From the IMG/VR virus record IMGVR_UViG_3300032334_002567, positions 1 through 64,000 of that record: DNA of 64,000 nucleotides. One strand, given 5' to 3'. The translations under genes were made by a program, and so were the position numbers. Of the stretch, positions 2,791-46,911 are shown piece after piece; the stretch's first letter is position 1; every line of letters starts with the position of its first letter. A model generated the notes under the pieces. The model was not told where the DNA came from and did not search any database. It worked only from the letters and a program-made list of their open reading frames with translations.

Positions 2791-2816
2791 ATATTACTAT
2801 TAATTATTTTAGATAA

Positions 2817-3116
2817 CTAAACCCCAGCTTCGATCAAATCCATCAAGGGACGTCTTACCAAAGTGCTTTTTGATGAAACAATCCTTCTTTTCTGGCTTGA
2901 ACGTAAATTGCTTTGTTTCGCAATCTTACTACGGTTATAGGTCTTTACAGGGGCTTTTGAGGCCACTCTAACAATATTTCCGTCCCTGAGTTCGTAACCC
3001 TTAATATGGTCCTTTGTGGACTCAATAACCAATACGGTTCTGCGAACCGGATGAGTGTGATTCCCCTTATACCAAAAACGAGCTACTGGGACATTTTCAA
3101 CTAAATCATACTTCAT
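2817..3116 (-). CDS. Small basic protein, possibly WYL/Sm-like fold
   Basis: VARFWY...RRTVLV...IKGYELR...KTYNRSKI loosely matches the WYL pattern; ATGA overlap with the upstream gene. Confidence 0.4.
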   Translation of the reverse strand: MKYDLVENVPVARFWYKGNHTHPVRRTVLVIESTKDHIKGYELRDGNIVRVASKAPVKTYNRSKIAKQSNLRSSQKRRIVSSKSTLVRRPLMDLIEAGV

Positions 3117-3655
3117 TTGTCAATCTCCTTTCTAATTTCTGTGAGTAACTGTGAAGCATATCGTGCATCTCCAAGTAATTTATTAGAAAATCGTGTGTCA
3201 GTCAAGGGGACTACATATAATAAATTTTCTTTCACAACATCAGGAGTGTCATGAGGCTCATATTGATCTTCTGGCAATTCGACTTCTGCTATTGCCATAT
3301 AAATATGCTCTTTATAATCTCTAAAGAAATCAATTTCCCAAGTATTTTCAAATGAATTAATTATATAACGGGTTTTTTCTAAACGGTTAAGAGCTATATT
3401 CCAAAGATCATCAAAATCTCGCTTATCTAACTTCTTTTCTACTTCTATAGCTCTACCACCTGTTGTAGCTTTTAAAGTAAAATAGTACTCAGTCTTTTGA
3501 TTGCTTAGTTTTACAGACTTACGAACACGTACCGTTATACCTCTTGTGGCTATAAGATAACCTTGGGATATGTCATACTGTGAGGATGAATTCTTTTTAA
3601 CTTCCGACTCACAGAGAGAATCTATGACATATTTTCTTTCATTTTCTGTAGGAAT
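3113..3655 (-). CDS. CYTH / triphosphate tunnel metalloenzyme (CyaB-like), 180 aa, ATT start; the ORF track shows only the last 61 aa
   Basis: (M)PTENERKY (ExExK), ISQGYL, VRVR, FTLK, EVE, EKTRY, WEIDFF, IAEVEL, DTRFSNKLL; AGGAGA 7 nt upstream of ATT. Confidence 0.88.
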   Translation of the reverse strand: MPTENERKYVIDSLCESEVKKNSSSQYDISQGYLIATRGITVRVRKSVKLSNQKTEYYFTLKATTGGRAIEVEKKLDKRDFDDLWNIALNRLEKTRYIINSFENTWEIDFFRDYKEHIYMAIAEVELPEDQYEPHDTPDVVKENLLYVVPLTDTRFSNKLLGDARYASQLLTEIRKEIDK

Positions 3656-3666
3656 GGATAAATCTC

Positions 3667-4092
3667 CTATTTTTTTAGTATCTGTCTATAGCTGTCTACA
3701 TCTTCTCTACTCTTCTGAACCTGTCCTTCTAAGAATATCTCTAGCCACTGTCCGTCTACGCCACCAAGCTCAACAGCATCTTTCATTCTTTGAACATAAT
3801 TTTCTACAACTTCTTCTTCCATCTTTAAAGCGTAGGCAAATATTTGCTCAGGATCTGTAAATTTTTCAAAGCTATTTCTTTCATCCGTAGCCGTACCGCC
3901 CAAACCAAGTATTACATCTGAGAATTCTGTGACATGGATCATTTCACCAGCAGCTTCTTTTAGAAAAAATTCTTTATATTCCTCACGGTTTAAGCCAGTC
4001 ACGGCACTTGCGTGATAAAGGTAGAAACAAAGATGTTTCCATTCATTTTTCAAGTCGTTCTTTAATAAATCTATCATTTTATCTTTATTCAT
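3667..4092 (-). CDS. Ferritin-like (bacterioferritin/Dps-type) four-helix protein
   Basis: DLKNEW...Y, EAAGEMIH (ExxH), ILGLGG, MEEEVVENY; final ExxH altered to SRED. Confidence 0.8.
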   Translation of the reverse strand: MNKDKMIDLLKNDLKNEWKHLCFYLYHASAVTGLNREEYKEFFLKEAAGEMIHVTEFSDVILGLGGTATDERNSFEKFTDPEQIFAYALKMEEEVVENYVQRMKDAVELGGVDGQWLEIFLEGQVQKSREDVDSYRQILKK

Positions 4093-4212
4093 AATTTACC
4101 TTTTATATTTTGTAAACAAGGCTAAAAACCATATATATTATGCGTATTTCGCCAAGTTGGACTATCTTATTTTAGTCAAAAGAAATTTTACTTCAAGTCA
4201 AAAAAGGTTCAA

Positions 4213-6039
4213 ATGTCAGAAAAATTTTGGATATCCACCCACGGTTCATTAAAGAAATTTTATGAAAGTGGTGGTATTGCAGATAGAAAAACTGGAAAAC
4301 TGCAGTATGATCCAAAATACTACACTTTTGATAAATATGAACTTGAAATTGATCCCACAGAAACACTAGAAGTTGTTGACCTTTATGATACTGCCAGACA
4401 ACAAAAAGAAATAATTAAATGTTGCAATTCTTTTCCTTATTTTTGTCACAAATATATAAGAATTCTTCATCCAATGAAAGGATTAATTCCTTTCGTATTA
4501 TTTAATTATCAAAGAAAAGTAATAAAAGATTATGAAAACAATAGATTCAATATTATTAGTAAATTTAGACAAGGAGGTTTGACGACAGTAACCTTACTTT
4601 GGGGTCTATGGAAGTGTATGTTTCAAATGGATCAACAAGTAATGTTAATCTCTAAAACAGATAGAGAGGCGACAGATACTGGGCTAATTATTGACAGAGC
4701 TTGTGAAAATTTACCTGCTTGGCTTAAGCCTAAAAAAGATGCAAAATGGAATGACCATTTAAAAATGTTTACAGATACAGGCTCTGCTATAAAGTTTTAT
4801 TCTCCAGAAGCTTCTCGTGGAAAAGCAGTAACTTTTTTAATAATAGACGAAGCTGCATTTATTGAAGATATGGACAAACACTGGAAAGCTATGTGGCCGG
4901 TTTTATCCACGGGTGGTTCTTGTACGCTGATATCAACGGTGAATGGTCTAGGAAATTGGTACGAACAAACGTATAGAGATGCCAAAGATAACAAAAATAA
5001 ATTCCACGTAATAGACCTAGATTTCTGGGAGCATCCTGATTACAACGATGACGACTGGATAGCCGAACAGAAAGCTCAGCTTGGAGAAAAAGGCTTTCTC
5101 CAAGAAGTAATGAGAGAGTTTCTAGGATCAGGAGAAACATATTTTCCAACTAAAACAATCACTCAATTAACCGAGCAAACTAGAAACAATTATCCTAATA
5201 GAAAGCTGTTTGCAAAATGGTGTAATAAAAATGGAAGAATGTCACAGCTAGAAGATGAATATTCTAAAGGTGCATTGTGGCTATGGAAAGAGCCGATAGA
5301 AGGCAGAGAATACATAATAGGAGCAGACTGTGCAGAGGGACAAGGCGAGAACAATGATAGTTCTTGTTTTCAAGTTATTGACACGAACAGTTTAGAACAA
5401 GTTGCTGAGTTTTATTCAAATACTATTTTACCTCATGAATTCGCACAAGTAATGAATGAGGTTGGAACATTTTACAACAATGCAATGTTGGCAATAGAAA
5501 ACATGGGTGCAGGAATGGCTGTTATTAGCAATCTTCAGCACACCCTTTATTATGATAATTTGTACTATGACACAACAAAAATTACAGCGAGCACAAAGCC
5601 CGGAATAAAGATGGGCCAAAATAATAGGTCATTATATCTCGAATGCCTTCAAAACAATATTATAAATCAATCTGTTCTAATTAATAGTATAAGATTTGTT
5701 ACAGAACTACAGACTTTCGAATATAATCCTACTACTAAAAAAGCACAGGCTCAAAAAGGAAAACATGATGATGCAATTATGGCAATGTCGATTGCTTTAT
5801 ACGTAAGAGAATCGTTAACTAGAGATTTGCCTATAGGAGCAGAGTCAAAAGATTCCGCAGCCTTAAAATCACAAGTTTACGATGAAATTAAAAAAGAACT
5901 AGAAGAAGGCATAGAAGATTTTATAAGTAATGAAGAAATAGATTTATTGGCTCCTAATATGGACACATTACACAACATAGATTTCTTCCCAAATGCCCAA
6001 AGAAAGAATGATAGCATAATAAAAGAATTTGGATGGTAA
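4213..6039 (+). CDS. Terminase large subunit, T4 gp17-like
   Basis: PFVLFNYQ, KFRQGGLTT, LIIDEAAF (Walker B), LISTVNG, QE..EFLG, YIIGADCAEG, AIEN, HDDAIMA (RNase H-like nuclease). Confidence 0.95.
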   Translation: MSEKFWISTHGSLKKFYESGGIADRKTGKLQYDPKYYTFDKYELEIDPTETLEVVDLYDTARQQKEIIKCCNSFPYFCHKYIRILHPMKGLIPFVLFNYQRKVIKDYENNRFNIISKFRQGGLTTVTLLWGLWKCMFQMDQQVMLISKTDREATDTGLIIDRACENLPAWLKPKKDAKWNDHLKMFTDTGSAIKFYSPEASRGKAVTFLIIDEAAFIEDMDKHWKAMWPVLSTGGSCTLISTVNGLGNWYEQTYRDAKDNKNKFHVIDLDFWEHPDYNDDDWIAEQKAQLGEKGFLQEVMREFLGSGETYFPTKTITQLTEQTRNNYPNRKLFAKWCNKNGRMSQLEDEYSKGALWLWKEPIEGREYIIGADCAEGQGENNDSSCFQVIDTNSLEQVAEFYSNTILPHEFAQVMNEVGTFYNNAMLAIENMGAGMAVISNLQHTLYYDNLYYDTTKITASTKPGIKMGQNNRSLYLECLQNNIINQSVLINSIRFVTELQTFEYNPTTKKAQAQKGKHDDAIMAMSIALYVRESLTRDLPIGAESKDSAALKSQVYDEIKKELEEGIEDFISNEEIDLLAPNMDTLHNIDFFPNAQRKNDSIIKEFGW

Positions 6040-44713: not shown

Positions 44714-45757
44714 ATGAAAGTTGAAAGCGAAATAAAGCTAGATTTCAACGATGTGTTAATAAAGCCAAAAAGAAGTAGTCTCGAAAGCAGATCTCAAGTA
44801 GACCTGAATAGAGAATACAAATTTAGAAATTCTTCCATAAAAATTGAGGTTGGTGTGCCTCTCGTAGCAGCCAACATGGATACAATTGCTACGTTTGAAA
44901 TGGCCCGAGCTTTGTCAAAAAGAAACATATGGACAGCCTTACATAAATTTTACTCTATCAATGAGATTGAAAAATTTTTTAAAGAAGAAGCAGACGTAGC
45001 TTCTAAGTGCTTTTATTCTCTAGGAATAAATGAAGATGATTTTGATAAGATAAAAAAACTTCAAGGATTAGGTGTAAAGCTTCCGTTCATTTGTGTTGAC
45101 GTTGCAAACGGCTATAGCCAAAAGTTCGTAAATGAATGTGGTTATTTAAGAAAGCTATTCCCAAATGCAGTAATATTGGCTGGGAACGTATGTACACCAG
45201 AAATGGTACAAGAGCTACTGATTTCGGGCGGAGTGGACATAATTAAAGTAGGGATAGGTGGTGGAAGTGGATGTATCACTAGGCATACAACGGGCATAGG
45301 ATTTCCACAACTTAGTGCCGTAATAGAATGCGGCGATGCTGCTCATGGTCTAGGCGGGCATATCTGCTCTGATGGTGGTTGTAGGGCTCCTGGCGACATA
45401 GCCAAAGCATTTGCTGCTGGTGCTGACTTTGTGATGATGGGAGGCATGTTAGCGGGGCATGATGAATGTGGAGGTGAATTTAAACTAAATGAAAATGGCG
45501 AAAGAAAATCCATGTGTTTTTATGGAATGAGCTCTGAGCTTGCTATGAAAAAATACTATGGAGGCAAAGCTAGCTATAGAGCAAGTGAAGGAAGAGTAAT
45601 AGAAGTCCCCTATAAAGGCCATGTAGATCAGACTATAGAACAAATATTGGGTGGGTTAAGAAGCACTTGCACTTATGTTGGTACAGATAAATTAAAAGAC
45701 TTATCAAAGTGCACTACATTTATAAGAGTGAATAGAGTACACGATAATATGAATTAA
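44714..45757 (+). CDS. guaC: GMP reductase
   Basis: KLDFNDVLIKPKRS, AANMD, DVANGY, KVGIGGGSGCITR, SDGG, FYGMSS, YRASEG, GGLRSTCTYVG. Confidence 0.93.
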   Translation: MKVESEIKLDFNDVLIKPKRSSLESRSQVDLNREYKFRNSSIKIEVGVPLVAANMDTIATFEMARALSKRNIWTALHKFYSINEIEKFFKEEADVASKCFYSLGINEDDFDKIKKLQGLGVKLPFICVDVANGYSQKFVNECGYLRKLFPNAVILAGNVCTPEMVQELLISGGVDIIKVGIGGGSGCITRHTTGIGFPQLSAVIECGDAAHGLGGHICSDGGCRAPGDIAKAFAAGADFVMMGGMLAGHDECGGEFKLNENGERKSMCFYGMSSELAMKKYYGGKASYRASEGRVIEVPYKGHVDQTIEQILGGLRSTCTYVGTDKLKDLSKCTTFIRVNRVHDNMN

Positions 45758-45768
45758 GAGGTGAAAAT

Positions 45769-46911
45769 ATTTGTGGAATAGCAGGTTTTATAGGTTTATC
45801 TAAAAAACCTATCTTTAGTTACCAGCTTACAACTAAACTATTTGAAATAAGTGAATCCAGAGGAATTGATGCCGCAGGATTTTGGGCCGTGCGTCCTGAT
45901 GGTGGCGTTATATACCATAAAAAACCCATTAGATCATCTAGGTTTGTAAAGAGAGATGAATGGAGGGATGTTTTTAAATATAATCCTAATTTATTATTAG
46001 CACACGCAAGAGGAGCTTCTAAAGGTGTAGGAGAGCCTATGTTTAATAAAAACAATCATCCTTTCACAAGCTTAGACAAGTCTATTGGTCTTATCCACAA
46101 TGGCAGGGTAGAAGACTCTGAGTATCGGTCTTTAAAAAAAGCATATGAAGTATCAAGTGATTGCGATTCTGAAGTTATCCTTAGAATAATAGAAGCTGGC
46201 TCGCACTATCATCCGCATGAGATTACAGAGTTTATAAATCTGGATTATCCAAATAGATTAGCAGGGATTAGGGACGTTTATTCCTTTATAAACTCTGGTC
46301 ATTTAGCTGTGGCTGTGGGTGAGAGGAATGACGAAAACAATAGATCCCTGTGGCTTTTTAGAAACGCTTATAGACCTCTTTGGATTGTGGATATGCGTGA
46401 GCTACTAGGACAAATATTCTTTGTCTCAGAGCCGGGAATATGGGAGGAGTCAATAAATGAATGTCCTTCTATTAGAGGACATTCTAAATTTCAAAAATTA
46501 ATAGAGTTGCCACCGGAAGAAGTTTGGTTGATAGAATCAACAAAAGAAGAACCAACTCCAAATAAAATAAAAAAATACAAAGTTTCTAAAAGCAAAGAAA
46601 TAAGTGCTAATGAAATAAACAAATATTTTCCATTGATAGAAAAGCAGCCGTCGTTTGAAGTAATAAGCACAATAAGCGAAGAAAAAGAAACCCACCAATT
46701 TTTCGAAAATAATGATTGGGAAGAATTAGAATTAAAAGAGCTTGAAAGTAAATGCAACAAAGTTTCAGAAACTGTTCAAGAAATTAAAAATTGGGTAAAA
46801 GAAAAAACTACAAAACAGTCTATAGGCAAGGACGAAATAGATAGAATCTCTAATTTAATGAATAATCAAATCGATGATATGAACAAAATAGTTTCAATAC
46901 TGGAGAATTAG
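45769..46911 (+). CDS. Class II (Ntn) glutamine amidotransferase, ATT start
   Basis: (M)CGIAGFIG, SRGIDAAG, LAHARGAS, NNHPF, HNG, CDSE; GAGGTG SD 5 nt before ATT. Confidence 0.88.
   Translation: MCGIAGFIGLSKKPIFSYQLTTKLFEISESRGIDAAGFWAVRPDGGVIYHKKPIRSSRFVKRDEWRDVFKYNPNLLLAHARGASKGVGEPMFNKNNHPFTSLDKSIGLIHNGRVEDSEYRSLKKAYEVSSDCDSEVILRIIEAGSHYHPHEITEFINLDYPNRLAGIRDVYSFINSGHLAVAVGERNDENNRSLWLFRNAYRPLWIVDMRELLGQIFFVSEPGIWEESINECPSIRGHSKFQKLIELPPEEVWLIESTKEEPTPNKIKKYKVSKSKEISANEINKYFPLIEKQPSFEVISTISEEKETHQFFENNDWEELELKELESKCNKVSETVQEIKNWVKEKTTKQSIGKDEIDRISNLMNNQIDDMNKIVSILEN

What the first reader, a model, noticed from the sequence alone, without database searches (positions are those of the whole stretch)
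3113..3670. CYTH gene apparently starts at ATT behind a strong Shine-Dalgarno
Seen: on the minus strand, AGGAGA-7 nt-ATT CCT ACA GAA AAT GAA AGA AAA gives (M)PTENERK. There is no in-frame ATG/GTG/TTG between the upstream stop (3686-3688) and this point. Known: the CYTH ExExK motif lies in the first few residues, so the track's 61-aa ORF cannot be the enzyme. AUU starts are rare in bacteria (infC, pcnB) and are repressed by IF3. Inference: deliberate IF3-sensitive translational control.
Basis: partly seen in the sequence, partly recalled or inferred. Interest (0 to 1): 0.7.

Follow-up and report, generated by a model that had tools for sequence, protein, structure and literature searches.

The report
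Phage triphosphatase gene starting at ATT
A huge freshwater phage starts its CYTH/triphosphate-tunnel enzyme gene at the rare codon ATT, as do about a fifth of its relatives, so this is a real weak start that standard gene callers miss, cutting off the catalytic motif.

Summary
On the minus strand, AGGAGA (3668-3663), a 7-nt spacer and ATT (3655-3653) open a 180-codon frame. No ATG/GTG/TTG lies between the in-frame TAG (3688-3686) and the ATT. The first canonical start (ATG 3298) would give only the last 61 residues.

The product is a triphosphate tunnel metalloenzyme (CYTH) with ExExK at residues 4-8.

The ATT codon aligns with codon 1 of about 70 homologues, all beginning (M/I/L)PTENE[RK]K. 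ATG is commonest, but ATT with a Shine-Dalgarno recurs in at least 13 independent assemblies. It needs at least 4-6 switches on the tree. GTG never appears. About 20 of 117 database clusters are N-truncated gene calls, and all 4 that I could check are ATT starts. Coding sequence is under purifying selection (dN/dS 0.04-0.2).

ATT starts are not genome-wide, but this is not the only one. The same 381-kb phage has two more ATT-start genes: a class-II glutamine amidotransferase at window 45769 and an FmdB zinc-ribbon gene. It also has its own full-length IF3 gene, which starts at ATG.

IF3 sensitivity follows from E. coli knowledge and was not tested. "Deliberate control" is only partly supported. 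The best reading is a weak, coupling-assisted start that limits the enzyme's level, as in pcnB.

The parts
3653..3655 (-). ATT initiation codon of the TTM/CYTH gene
   Evidence: It aligns with codon 1 (ATG, ATT, TTG or ATA) of about 70 homologues, all followed by PTENE[RK]K.
3663..3668 (-). Shine-Dalgarno AGGAGA, 7 nt upstream of ATT; it overlaps the TAG stop of the upstream gene
   Evidence: Duplex energy with the anti-SD is -7.3 kcal/mol. ATT members of the family average -8.0 against -6.5 for ATG members (p=0.037, not corrected for phylogeny).
3113..3655 (-). TTM/CYTH coding sequence: 180 codons plus TGA stop at 3113-3115
   Evidence: PDB NeuTTM 2FBL/3TYP, E 2e-6 with the single sequence and 2e-9 with a profile. 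AlphaFold model pLDDT 93. Foldseek top hits are all TTM/CYTH proteins. Also phrog_6660.
3632..3646 (-). ExExK motif (E4-N-E6-R-K8) in the first beta strand
   Evidence: Invariant in the 31-sequence alignment. The strand spans residues 5-11 in the model. Query residue 3 aligns with residue 4-5 of the deposited NeuTTM chains, so the motifs align.
3686..3688 (-). In-frame TAG that closes the frame upstream of ATT
   Evidence: TAA, TAG and TGA all occur further upstream in this frame, so stop-codon recoding does not explain the frame.
3296..3298 (-). First in-frame canonical start (ATG), giving only the C-terminal 61 residues
   Evidence: This ORF lacks the ExExK motif and most of the barrel strands.
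3667..4092 (-). Upstream ferritin-like gene (141 aa, stop TAG 3667-3669), 11 nt before ATT; conserved partner of the TTM gene
   Evidence: Pfam PF00210, 57 bits, profile positions 1-137 of 142. The same family lies directly upstream in 22 of 33 loci with an identifiable upstream ORF (38 examined) and in L152, L154 and L155.
3670..3676 (-). A7 run, an A_AAA_AAA heptamer in the ferritin frame; a -1 slip here would enter the TTM frame (rival explanation, rejected)
   Evidence: Read. Not conserved in relatives, for example L001 and L016.
2817..3116 (-). Downstream 99-aa gene of unknown function; its ATG overlaps the TTM stop (ATGA)
   Evidence: A 100-aa gene follows the TTM gene in L152, L153 and L155. 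No Pfam or PHROG hit and no lead from the Atlas.
45769..46911 (+). Second ATT-start gene in the window: a class-II (Ntn) glutamine amidotransferase, (M)CGIAGF..., behind GAGGTGA, 11 nt after the stop of the upstream ORF
   Evidence: NCBIfam GlmS profiles align position 1 to residue 1 or 2. Pfam GATase_6 also hits. The next canonical start lies 40 codons in.

Best explanation
ATT at 3655-3653 is the true initiation codon of a 180-aa triphosphate tunnel metalloenzyme (CYTH superfamily). The gene is the second cistron of a conserved phage cassette: ferritin-like gene, TTM gene, then a 100-aa gene. Shown here: the position is the family's start codon; ATT recurs there behind good Shine-Dalgarno sequences; no canonical start could give a functional enzyme; the gene is under purifying selection. 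Inferred from established E. coli work (infC, pcnB, all-64-codon reporters): host fMet-tRNA reads AUU with a third-position mismatch, so initiation runs at roughly 1-15% of AUG and is the class of event that IF3 rejects. The strong SD and the 11-nt gap after the ferritin stop would partly compensate, through de novo binding and through termination-reinitiation coupling. The net effect would be a low, fixed ratio of TTM to its upstream partner. This limits an enzyme that destroys triphosphates or NTPs, in the manner of pcnB rather than the feedback loop of infC. Output should fall when IF3 activity rises, which is relevant because this phage brings its own IF3, but that link is untested.
For: Anatomy. 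TTM identity with ExExK at residues 4-8. Start-codon table: codon 1 before PTENE[RK]K is ATG in about 55 distinct loci, ATT in 10, ATA in 1, TTG in 2 and GTG in 0. Nine of the ten ATT loci lack any in-frame canonical start after the upstream stop, and all have an SD at 4-9 nt. In the viral scan, whose search pattern did not include the start codon, 6 of 23 distinct loci (counting the window) have ATT. Of 117 protein clusters, 90 begin (M/L/V)PTENE and about 20 are N-truncated calls. All 4 truncated calls with retrievable DNA have SD plus ATT at the family start. Trees: ATT needs 7-10 changes, at least 6 forced by well-supported branches. ATT and ATG lie side by side in near-identical sequences (L008 next to L010/L011). 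dN/dS is 0.04-0.2, including ATT copies. The window and L152 both keep ATT at dS about 1.5. A genome-wide scan of the 381-kb phage finds only 3 convincing ATT starts among about 570 genes, so ATT is gene-specific rather than general. All three lie 7-11 nt after an upstream same-strand stop. The Logan contig at depth 57 confirms ATT. Literature: AUU gives 0.1-3% of AUG (bioRxiv 10.1101/063800). It gives 6-8 fold less than AUG with an SD, and 4 fold less in the infC junction, where coupling doubles it (PMC3592434).
Against: There is no direct evidence of translation: no proteomics, ribosome profiling or reporter. The host is unknown, so AUU efficiency and IF3 stringency in it are unknown. ATG and ATT alternate between near-identical proteins (L008 versus L011), which could mean the codon is nearly neutral rather than tuned. 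Part of the apparent recurrence may be one event moved by recombination: L008, L012 and L040 share an HNH-like upstream gene that overlaps the start. The SD-strength difference is weak (p=0.037, uncorrected). The metagenome scan pattern was [IM]PTENE, which favours ATN starts, so only the viral scan and the protein-database counts are unbiased.
Confidence: 0.78

Rival explanations
1. ATT is the start codon but has no regulatory purpose. In these phages or hosts the TTM gene tolerates a very wide range of expression, so ATG and ATT drift back and forth under AT-biased mutation.
For: ATG/ATT flips occur between almost identical proteins (L008 versus L011; dN 0.005, dS 0.13). The genomes are AT-rich (36.5% GC), so G-to-T changes are favoured. 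One ATA start also exists (L068).
Against: If expression level did not matter, GTG and TTG should be at least as common, since A-to-G is a transition. GTG is absent and TTG occurs twice. ATT is retained at saturated synonymous divergence (the window and L152). ATT members keep SDs that are as strong or stronger. Only 3 of about 570 genes in the genome use ATT.
Confidence: 0.2
2. Programmed -1 frameshifting or transcriptional slippage on the A7 run (A_AAA_AAA, 3676-3670) fuses the ferritin-like protein to the TTM domain, so no separate start is needed.
For: The heptamer is in the correct register of the ferritin frame. A -1 shift enters the TTM frame with no stop before ATT (read).
Against: The run is not conserved. 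L001 ends ...AAA GGG AGA ATA A and L016 ends ...AGG TGA. Relatives with other upstream genes, or with gaps, keep the same N-terminus. The ferritin domain is complete, covering profile positions 1-137 of 142. An SD at correct spacing precedes ATT in all ATT lineages. No stimulatory structure is predicted (z +0.94). A minor by-product cannot be excluded.
Confidence: 0.03
3. The gene is a decaying pseudogene that has lost its start codon.
For: There is no canonical start. The database gene call for the window's own copy is truncated (P0002).
Against: All 21 invariant family residues are intact. dN/dS is 0.07-0.2 against relatives. The SD is retained. The same ATT occurs in 13 or more other assemblies.
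Confidence: 0.02
4. Sequencing or assembly error: the true codon is ATG.
For: Only one sample covers the site.
Against: An independent assembler at word depth 57 gives ATT with no variant. The same codon appears in many unrelated assemblies of relatives.
Confidence: 0.01

Closest known systems
E. coli pcnB (poly(A) polymerase I), translation limited by an AUU start (Binns and Masters 2002, cited in PMC3592434 and bioRxiv 10.1101/063800)
   Same: An AUU start behind an SD on an NTP-consuming enzyme whose level must stay low. The start codon varies among orthologues.
   Different: An unrelated protein family. The gene here is phage-borne, is the second cistron of a conserved cassette, and shows ATT in about a fifth of the family rather than in one species. 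Toxicity of this TTM has not been tested.
E. coli infC (IF3), AUU start used for IF3 autoregulation
   Same: An AUU codon a few nucleotides after the stop of the upstream gene, with an SD. This is the class of start discriminated by IF3, and coupling contributes to its use (PMC3592434).
   Different: There is no feedback logic, because the product is a triphosphatase-like enzyme. The phage's own infC, and that of its relatives, starts at ATG.
NeuTTM / NE1496 inorganic triphosphatase of Nitrosomonas europaea (PDB 2FBL, 3TYP)
   Same: The best sequence and fold match (E 2e-9 by profile; Foldseek E 1e-8, TM up to 0.67 by target). ExExK lies at the extreme N-terminus. It is a single-domain protein of similar size.
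   Different: Only 23-27% identity. The phage protein is about 30 residues longer, with a C-terminal helix at 164-179. It is not matched by Pfam CYTH. Its substrate is unknown.
CYTH triphosphatases of jumbo phages (Iyer et al. 2021, PMC7824862)
   Same: CYTH enzymes are reported scattered across jumbo phages and proposed to degrade NTPs. The relatives found here are mostly on contigs of 60-670 kb.
   Different: As far as my term search showed, that survey notes neither the start codon nor the ferritin-like partner gene ('ferritin' occurs 0 times).

Membership tests
CYTH / triphosphate tunnel metalloenzyme superfamily | ExExK motif in the first beta strand near the N-terminus | tested here: met
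   E4-N-E6-R-K8 is invariant in 31 homologues, lies in strand 5-11 of the model, and aligns with the NeuTTM motif.
CYTH / triphosphate tunnel metalloenzyme superfamily | Antiparallel beta-barrel (tunnel) fold | tested here: met
   The AlphaFold model has pLDDT 93.1 and pTM 0.87, with 9 strands. The 38 Foldseek PDB hits at E<=1e-3 are TTM/CYTH proteins: NeuTTM, AtTTM3, class IV cyclases, SaTTM, ThTPase, YgiF, Vtc4 and the vaccinia capping triphosphatase. This rests on a predicted structure, not a solved one.
CYTH / triphosphate tunnel metalloenzyme superfamily | Conserved basic (Arg/Lys) and acidic (Glu/Asp) residues on barrel strands for triphosphate and metal binding | tested here: met
   Invariant R45, K62, K94, R96, E71, E73, E124, E126 and D109; nearly invariant R43 and R68. 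That they point into the tunnel was not inspected residue by residue.
CYTH / triphosphate tunnel metalloenzyme superfamily | Match to the curated Pfam CYTH profile | tested here: not met
   Pfam-A gives no CYTH hit even at E<=10, and NCBIfam gives none. This is a divergent phage subfamily (phrog_6660). JGI labels several homologues 'CYTH domain-containing protein'.
CYTH / triphosphate tunnel metalloenzyme superfamily | Metal-dependent hydrolysis or cyclisation of a triphosphate substrate | not testable with these tools
   Needs an enzyme assay.
AUU-initiated bacterial genes (infC / pcnB type) | AUU at the position that is the start codon in homologues, with no usable canonical start | tested here: met
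   The next canonical start removes 119 residues.
AUU-initiated bacterial genes (infC / pcnB type) | Shine-Dalgarno at functional spacing | tested here: met
   AGGAGA with a 7-nt spacer. The same holds for the other ATT family members.
AUU-initiated bacterial genes (infC / pcnB type) | Protein demonstrably initiated at AUU with (f)Met | not testable with these tools
   No proteomic or ribosome-profiling data exist for this uncultured phage.
AUU-initiated bacterial genes (infC / pcnB type) | Expression inversely dependent on IF3 level or fidelity | not testable with these tools
   Inferred from E. coli only (PMC9723500 abstract; PMC3592434).
infC-type autoregulatory circuit | The AUU-started product is itself IF3, closing a feedback loop | tested here: not met
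   The product is a TTM. The phage infC (TIGR00168, 163.9 bits) starts at ATG, and so do those of its relatives.

The most novel reading that the evidence does not exclude
The phage combines a small set of AUU-started genes (TTM, Ntn-amidotransferase, FmdB zinc ribbon) with its own ATG-started IF3, whose C-domain differs from E. coli IF3 at R112, R116 and R129. By changing IF3 dosage or stringency in the infected cell, the phage would switch these AUU genes, and host AUU or leaky starts, on or off in time. That would be a virus-encoded start-codon-fidelity programme. The recurrent ATT in the TTM and zinc-ribbon families would be its evolutionary footprint.
Probability: 0.1. Interest if true: 0.8.

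Novelty: new member of a known kind. Interest (0 to 1): 0.5.

Why it matters
First, annotation. Callers restricted to ATG/GTG/TTG cut 9-119 residues, including the catalytic ExExK motif, from roughly a sixth of this phage enzyme family. Function and structure predictions for those entries are therefore wrong. The window's own database entry lacks its first 9 residues.

Second, biology. Confirmed AUU starts are very few (infC and pcnB in E. coli). Here one enzyme family in huge phages shows ATT at the start in about 17-25% of members, with repeated ATG/ATT switches and no GTG. A second family, the FmdB zinc ribbon, behaves similarly. This gives a natural comparative data set on why AUU rather than GUG or UUG is chosen.

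Third, the co-occurrence of AUU-start genes and a phage-encoded IF3 in one genome makes a concrete hypothesis testable with reporters: that phages manipulate start-codon stringency.

Tried and rejected
- **Close DNA relatives:** megablast of 2800-4300 against GenBank phages found no match.
- **Family profiles:** Pfam and NCBIfam give no CYTH hit for the TTM.
- **Stop-codon recoding:** rejected. All three stop codons occur upstream in the frame, and standard code 11 gives 93% coding density.
- **Other upstream non-canonical starts:** ATA 3670-3668 has no SD and lies outside the family N-terminus.
- **-1 frameshift on the A7 run:** rejected, see the rival explanations.
- **Regulatory RNA structure around the start:** none predicted. 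MFE is -11.3 kcal/mol, z +0.94. A weak SD:AUUCCUA hairpin appears only in the MFE structure, not in the centroid.
- **Phage initiator tRNA reading AUU:** rejected. The phage has 10 tRNAs. The single tRNA-Met(CAT) has a paired 1-72 end and lacks the three G-C pairs, so it looks like an elongator. None has an AAU or GAU anticodon.
- **Genome-wide relaxed start usage:** rejected. There are 3 convincing ATT starts in G000. The other SD-plus-ATT sites are simply ATT followed directly, or within a few codons, by a canonical start. In G002 (390 kb, ATT-start TTM) the strict scan found no further convincing case.
- **Link between ATT-start TTM and phage IF3:** rejected. IF3_C is absent from 5 other TTM-bearing records, two of them at least 98% complete.
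- **Relatives of the ATT-start amidotransferase:** none found in viral contigs.
- **Independent read support:** runs X2, X3 and X5 do not cover 3556-3719.
- **Structure-job restriction:** the GenBank-derived locus L004 was not accepted for the structure job, so it was left out of the alignment used.
- **Downstream 99-aa gene:** the Atlas look-up gave no usable lead.
Full report
**1. Where the window lies**

The window is the first 64 kb of a 381,443-bp IMG/VR virus record. CheckV estimates it 79% complete, and its GC content is 36.5%. The runs that hold this sequence are lake and freshwater metagenomes.

Coding density under the standard bacterial code is about 93%, and all three stop codons are in use. 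There is no sign of an alternative genetic code.

**2. The observation**

One search shows the following on the minus strand:
- the upstream gene ends ...AAA AAA TAG (TAG at 3669-3667);
- AGGAGA lies at 3668-3663;
- the spacer TTTATCC follows;
- ATT lies at 3655-3653, followed by CCT ACA GAA AAT GAA AGA AAA.

In the ATT frame the nearest upstream stop is TAG 3688-3686. None of the ten codons in between is ATG, GTG or TTG. Further upstream this frame holds stops of all three kinds.

The first canonical in-frame start is ATG 3298, 119 codons downstream. It gives the 61-aa ORF that a standard ORF list reports. The frame ends at TGA 3115-3113, which overlaps the ATG of the next gene (ATGA).

An independent Logan assembly of run X1, probably the source sample, has word depth 57 and matches 2900-4100 exactly. 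Three other runs hold relatives or parts of the region but do not cover 3556-3719. The codon is therefore confirmed only within one sample.

**3. What the gene is**

Pfam and NCBIfam do not recognise the protein. PHROGs places it in phrog_6660, of unknown function.

Sequence searches against solved structures do identify it. The best match is NE1496/NeuTTM, the inorganic triphosphatase of Nitrosomonas (2FBL, 3TYP). The E-value is 2e-6 with the single sequence, and query residue 3 aligns to residue 4-5 of the deposited chains. A profile of 32 homologues gives 2e-9.

An AlphaFold model built on 31 homologues is confident (pLDDT 93.1, pTM 0.87). Its 38 Foldseek PDB hits at E<=1e-3 are triphosphate tunnel metalloenzymes or CYTH proteins.

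E4, E6 and K8 (the ExExK motif) are invariant. So are R45, K62, E71, E73, K94, R96, D109, E124 and E126. The 61-aa ORF would keep only the last barrel strand or two and the C-terminal helices, so it cannot be the enzyme.

Iyer et al. (PMC7824862) already note that CYTH triphosphatases are scattered across jumbo phages.

**4. Is ATT the start?**

I collected relatives from IMG/VR (26 loci) and from JGI, ENA and NCBI metagenomes (69 loci). I then tabulated the codon aligned with the window's ATT.

Every full-length homologue begins (M/I/L)PTENE[RK]K. The codon before Pro is the first sensible start in all of them. Counts among non-duplicate loci:

| Codon 1 | Distinct loci |
|---|---|
| ATG | about 55 |
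| ATT | 10, counting the window |
| ATA | 1 |
| TTG | 2 |
| GTG | 0 |

All ATT loci except one (L058) lack any in-frame canonical start after the upstream stop. All have an SD 4-9 nt upstream, for example TAAGGAGGTG in L017 and AAGGAGA in L008 and L040.

The metagenome scan used the pattern [IM]PTENE, which is biased towards ATN codons. The viral scan used PTENE[RK]K and is unbiased. There, 6 of 23 distinct loci (counting the window) have ATT, 2 have TTG and none has GTG.

An independent sample comes from the protein database. Of 117 clusters at E<=1e-5, 90 begin (M/L/V)PTENE and about 20 are N-terminally truncated gene calls that lack the motif. I retrieved DNA for four of the truncated calls. 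All four have SD plus ATT at the family start (L152-L155). L155 encodes the same protein as L014.

The window's own database entry is also truncated: P0002 has 171 aa and begins VIDSL.

**5. Evolution of the codon**

On a tree of 70 homologues, ATT needs 7 changes, at least 6 of them forced by well-supported branches. All fall within one 37-member clade.

With the four extra loci added, the window's immediate 17-member clade has 9 ATT, 7 ATG and 1 TTG. ATT/ATG neighbours on the tree can be almost identical in protein: L008 versus L011 has dN 0.005 and dS 0.13.

One caution applies. L008, L012 and L040 share an HNH-like upstream gene that overlaps the start, so these three may represent one event moved by recombination. 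I therefore claim at least 4-6 independent switches rather than 7-10. The direction of change cannot be inferred.

Selection on the protein is clearly purifying, with dN/dS 0.04-0.2. The window and L152 both have ATT, a ferritin-like upstream gene and near-identical SD regions, although their dS is about 1.5.

SD pairing energy is slightly stronger in ATT members than in ATG members (mean -8.0 versus -6.5 kcal/mol; p=0.037, not corrected for phylogeny).

**6. Context**

The upstream gene (4092..3667) is a complete ferritin-like domain (PF00210). The same family lies directly upstream of the TTM gene in 22 of the 33 loci where an upstream ORF could be identified, out of 38 examined. It also does so in three of the extra loci.

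A gene of about 100 aa with unknown function usually follows. Ferritin-like, TTM and 100-aa genes therefore form a conserved cassette. The 11-nt gap leaves no room for a promoter, so the TTM is a downstream cistron.

**7. Is ATT use general in this phage?**

I scanned the whole record for near-cognate codons that met three conditions:
- they lie behind an SD;
- they lie at the 5' end of a long frame;
- no canonical start follows for at least 20 codons.

Apart from a tandem-repeat region, three convincing cases emerged: the TTM gene and the following two.
- **Window 45769 (+):** GAGGTGA-AAAT-ATT TGT GGA ATA GCA GGT encodes (M)CGIAGF.... This is a class-II (Ntn) glutamine amidotransferase. GlmS profiles align position 1 to residue 1 or 2. 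From general knowledge of GlmS, PurF and AsnB, the Cys must become residue 1 after Met removal.
- **G000 114505 (+):** AGGTGA-CTC-ATT CCA AGA TAT GAT TTT CAT TGT encodes (M)PRYDFHCKDC.... This is an FmdB-type zinc ribbon (TIGR02605 positions 2-49). The whole 111-codon frame has no canonical start codon.

All other SD-plus-ATT sites have a canonical start codon directly or a few codons after the ATT. The rate is therefore about 3 in 570 genes. That is far below the 17-25% seen in the TTM family.

All three ATT genes begin 7-11 nt after the stop of an upstream same-strand ORF.

In the zinc-ribbon family, ATT is again recurrent. It appears in the three closest relatives with a conserved TAGGTGATTTATT, and in a distant one. 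Others have GTG, TTG or ATG.

A second huge phage with an ATT-start TTM (G002, 390 kb) showed no other convincing ATT start under the strict scan.

**8. Translation factors**

The phage encodes a full-length IF3, with IF3_N plus IF3_C and an infC equivalog score of 163.9 bits, at G000 149285-149815. Its start is ATG. Three relatives that share the zinc-ribbon gene also carry IF3, and where I read the start (G006 and G007) it is ATG.

Five other TTM-bearing records lack IF3_C. They include one that is 98% complete with an ATT start and one that is 100% complete with ATG. ATT use in the TTM family therefore does not depend on a phage IF3.

I aligned the phage IF3 with E. coli IF3. It keeps Y75, R99, D106, R133 and E134, but has S, D, M and K at R112, R116, R129 and R131. 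From memory of IF3 C-domain mutagenesis (unverified here), some of these arginines matter for 30S binding and fidelity. I record this as a lead only.

The phage has 10 tRNAs. None could serve as an AUU-reading initiator.

**9. Mechanism**

*Shown:* ATT is the family's start position. It has an SD. No alternative start yields an enzyme. The gene is under selection. ATT is enriched in this family and is not genome-wide.

*Inferred from E. coli:*
- AUU is read by fMet-tRNA at 0.1-3% of AUG (bioRxiv 10.1101/063800).
- In SD-containing reporters it gives 6-8 fold less than AUG.
- In an infC-type junction it gives 4 fold less, with coupling contributing about twofold (PMC3592434).
- IF3 is the factor that rejects such complexes (PMC9723500 abstract).
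- IF3 excess also lowers re-initiation (PMC2268962).

The most economical reading is that ATT sets a low TTM output relative to the ferritin-like partner. This resembles pcnB, where an AUU start limits a potentially harmful NTP-using enzyme. IF3 sensitivity comes as an automatic property.

The absence of GTG and near-absence of TTG fit selection for a very weak start rather than for any non-ATG start. Near-neutral drift remains a serious rival, which I put at about 0.2.

**10. Rejected rivals**

- **-1 frameshift.** The A7 run 3676-3670 is a perfect A_AAA_AAA heptamer in the ferritin frame, and a -1 slip would enter the TTM frame. However, it is not conserved, the ferritin domain is complete, and no stimulatory structure is predicted.
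- **Pseudogene.** Excluded by the conservation and selection data above.
- **Sequencing error.** Excluded by the independent assembly and by the many relatives with ATT.
- **Recoding.** Excluded by the stop-codon usage above.

**11. Verdict**

This is a new member of a known kind, AUU-initiated genes. It has two added points of interest: family-wide recurrence that systematically breaks gene calls, and co-occurrence with a phage-encoded IF3.

Noticed in passing
window 45769-46911 (+): A second ATT-start gene: a class-II (Ntn) glutamine amidotransferase, (M)CGIAGF..., behind GAGGTGA and 11 nt after the stop of ORF 44714..45757. The canonical call (GTG 45889) removes the nucleophile Cys and 40 residues.
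   Followed up: partly
G000 114505-114840 (+) = L102:1006-1341: A third ATT-start gene: an FmdB-type CxxC zinc-ribbon protein of 111 codons, with no ATG/GTG/TTG anywhere in the frame. ATT is conserved in the close relatives L104-L106 (TAGGTGATTTATT) and also occurs in L118.
   Followed up: yes
G000 149285-149815 (+) = L101:1243-1773: A phage-encoded full-length IF3 (infC equivalog) that starts at ATG with a weak SD. Relative to E. coli IF3 it has S, D, M and K at R112, R116, R129 and R131. IF3 is also present in the related fragments G006, G007 and G008.
   Followed up: partly
window 2817-4092 (-) and loci L152-L155: A conserved three-gene cassette: ferritin-like gene, TTM gene, then a gene of about 100 aa with unknown function. 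The functional link between an iron-binding-type four-helix protein and a triphosphatase is unexplained.
   Followed up: partly
L008 about 820-1523, L012 745-1395, L040 about 820-1511: In three ATT lineages an HNH-like gene (motif CCxxCNxxKNHFF) replaces the ferritin gene as the upstream neighbour and overlaps the TTM start by 11-23 nt. It may be a mobile endonuclease that carries the 5' end, including ATT, between phages.
   Followed up: no
window 3670-3676 (-): An A7 run forming an in-register A_AAA_AAA slippery heptamer just before the ferritin stop. A -1 slip would enter the TTM frame. It is not conserved, so it is judged incidental.
   Followed up: yes
G000 about 379,600-381,400 (-): A long glycine-rich tandem-repeat coding region (IGGxxIGG...DTGG units). 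One of its frames (about 380,100-380,380) runs more than 160 codons without any canonical start codon. It produced many false SD-like AGGTG hits.
   Followed up: no
G000 190782-190138 (-): A 214-codon stop-to-stop frame without a single ATG/GTG/TTG in a 36% GC genome. Its composition looks non-coding or antisense. Not examined further.
   Followed up: no
G002 (record of L017) 21,700-74,500 and 170512-170586: This 390-kb relative carries 48 tRNAs, including one with anticodon CTA (called tRNA-Pyl by ARAGORN, that is, a TAG suppressor). This hints at possible TAG reassignment in that phage.
   Followed up: no
protein database clusters P0002, P0010, P0045, P0046, P0059, P0068, P0069, P0075-P0077, P0081, P0082, P0084, P0085, P0090, P0093, P0094, P0101, P0102, P0104: About 20 of 117 homologue clusters are N-terminally truncated gene calls lacking ExExK. 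All four checked are ATT starts, which implies a systematic annotation error for this family.
   Followed up: partly
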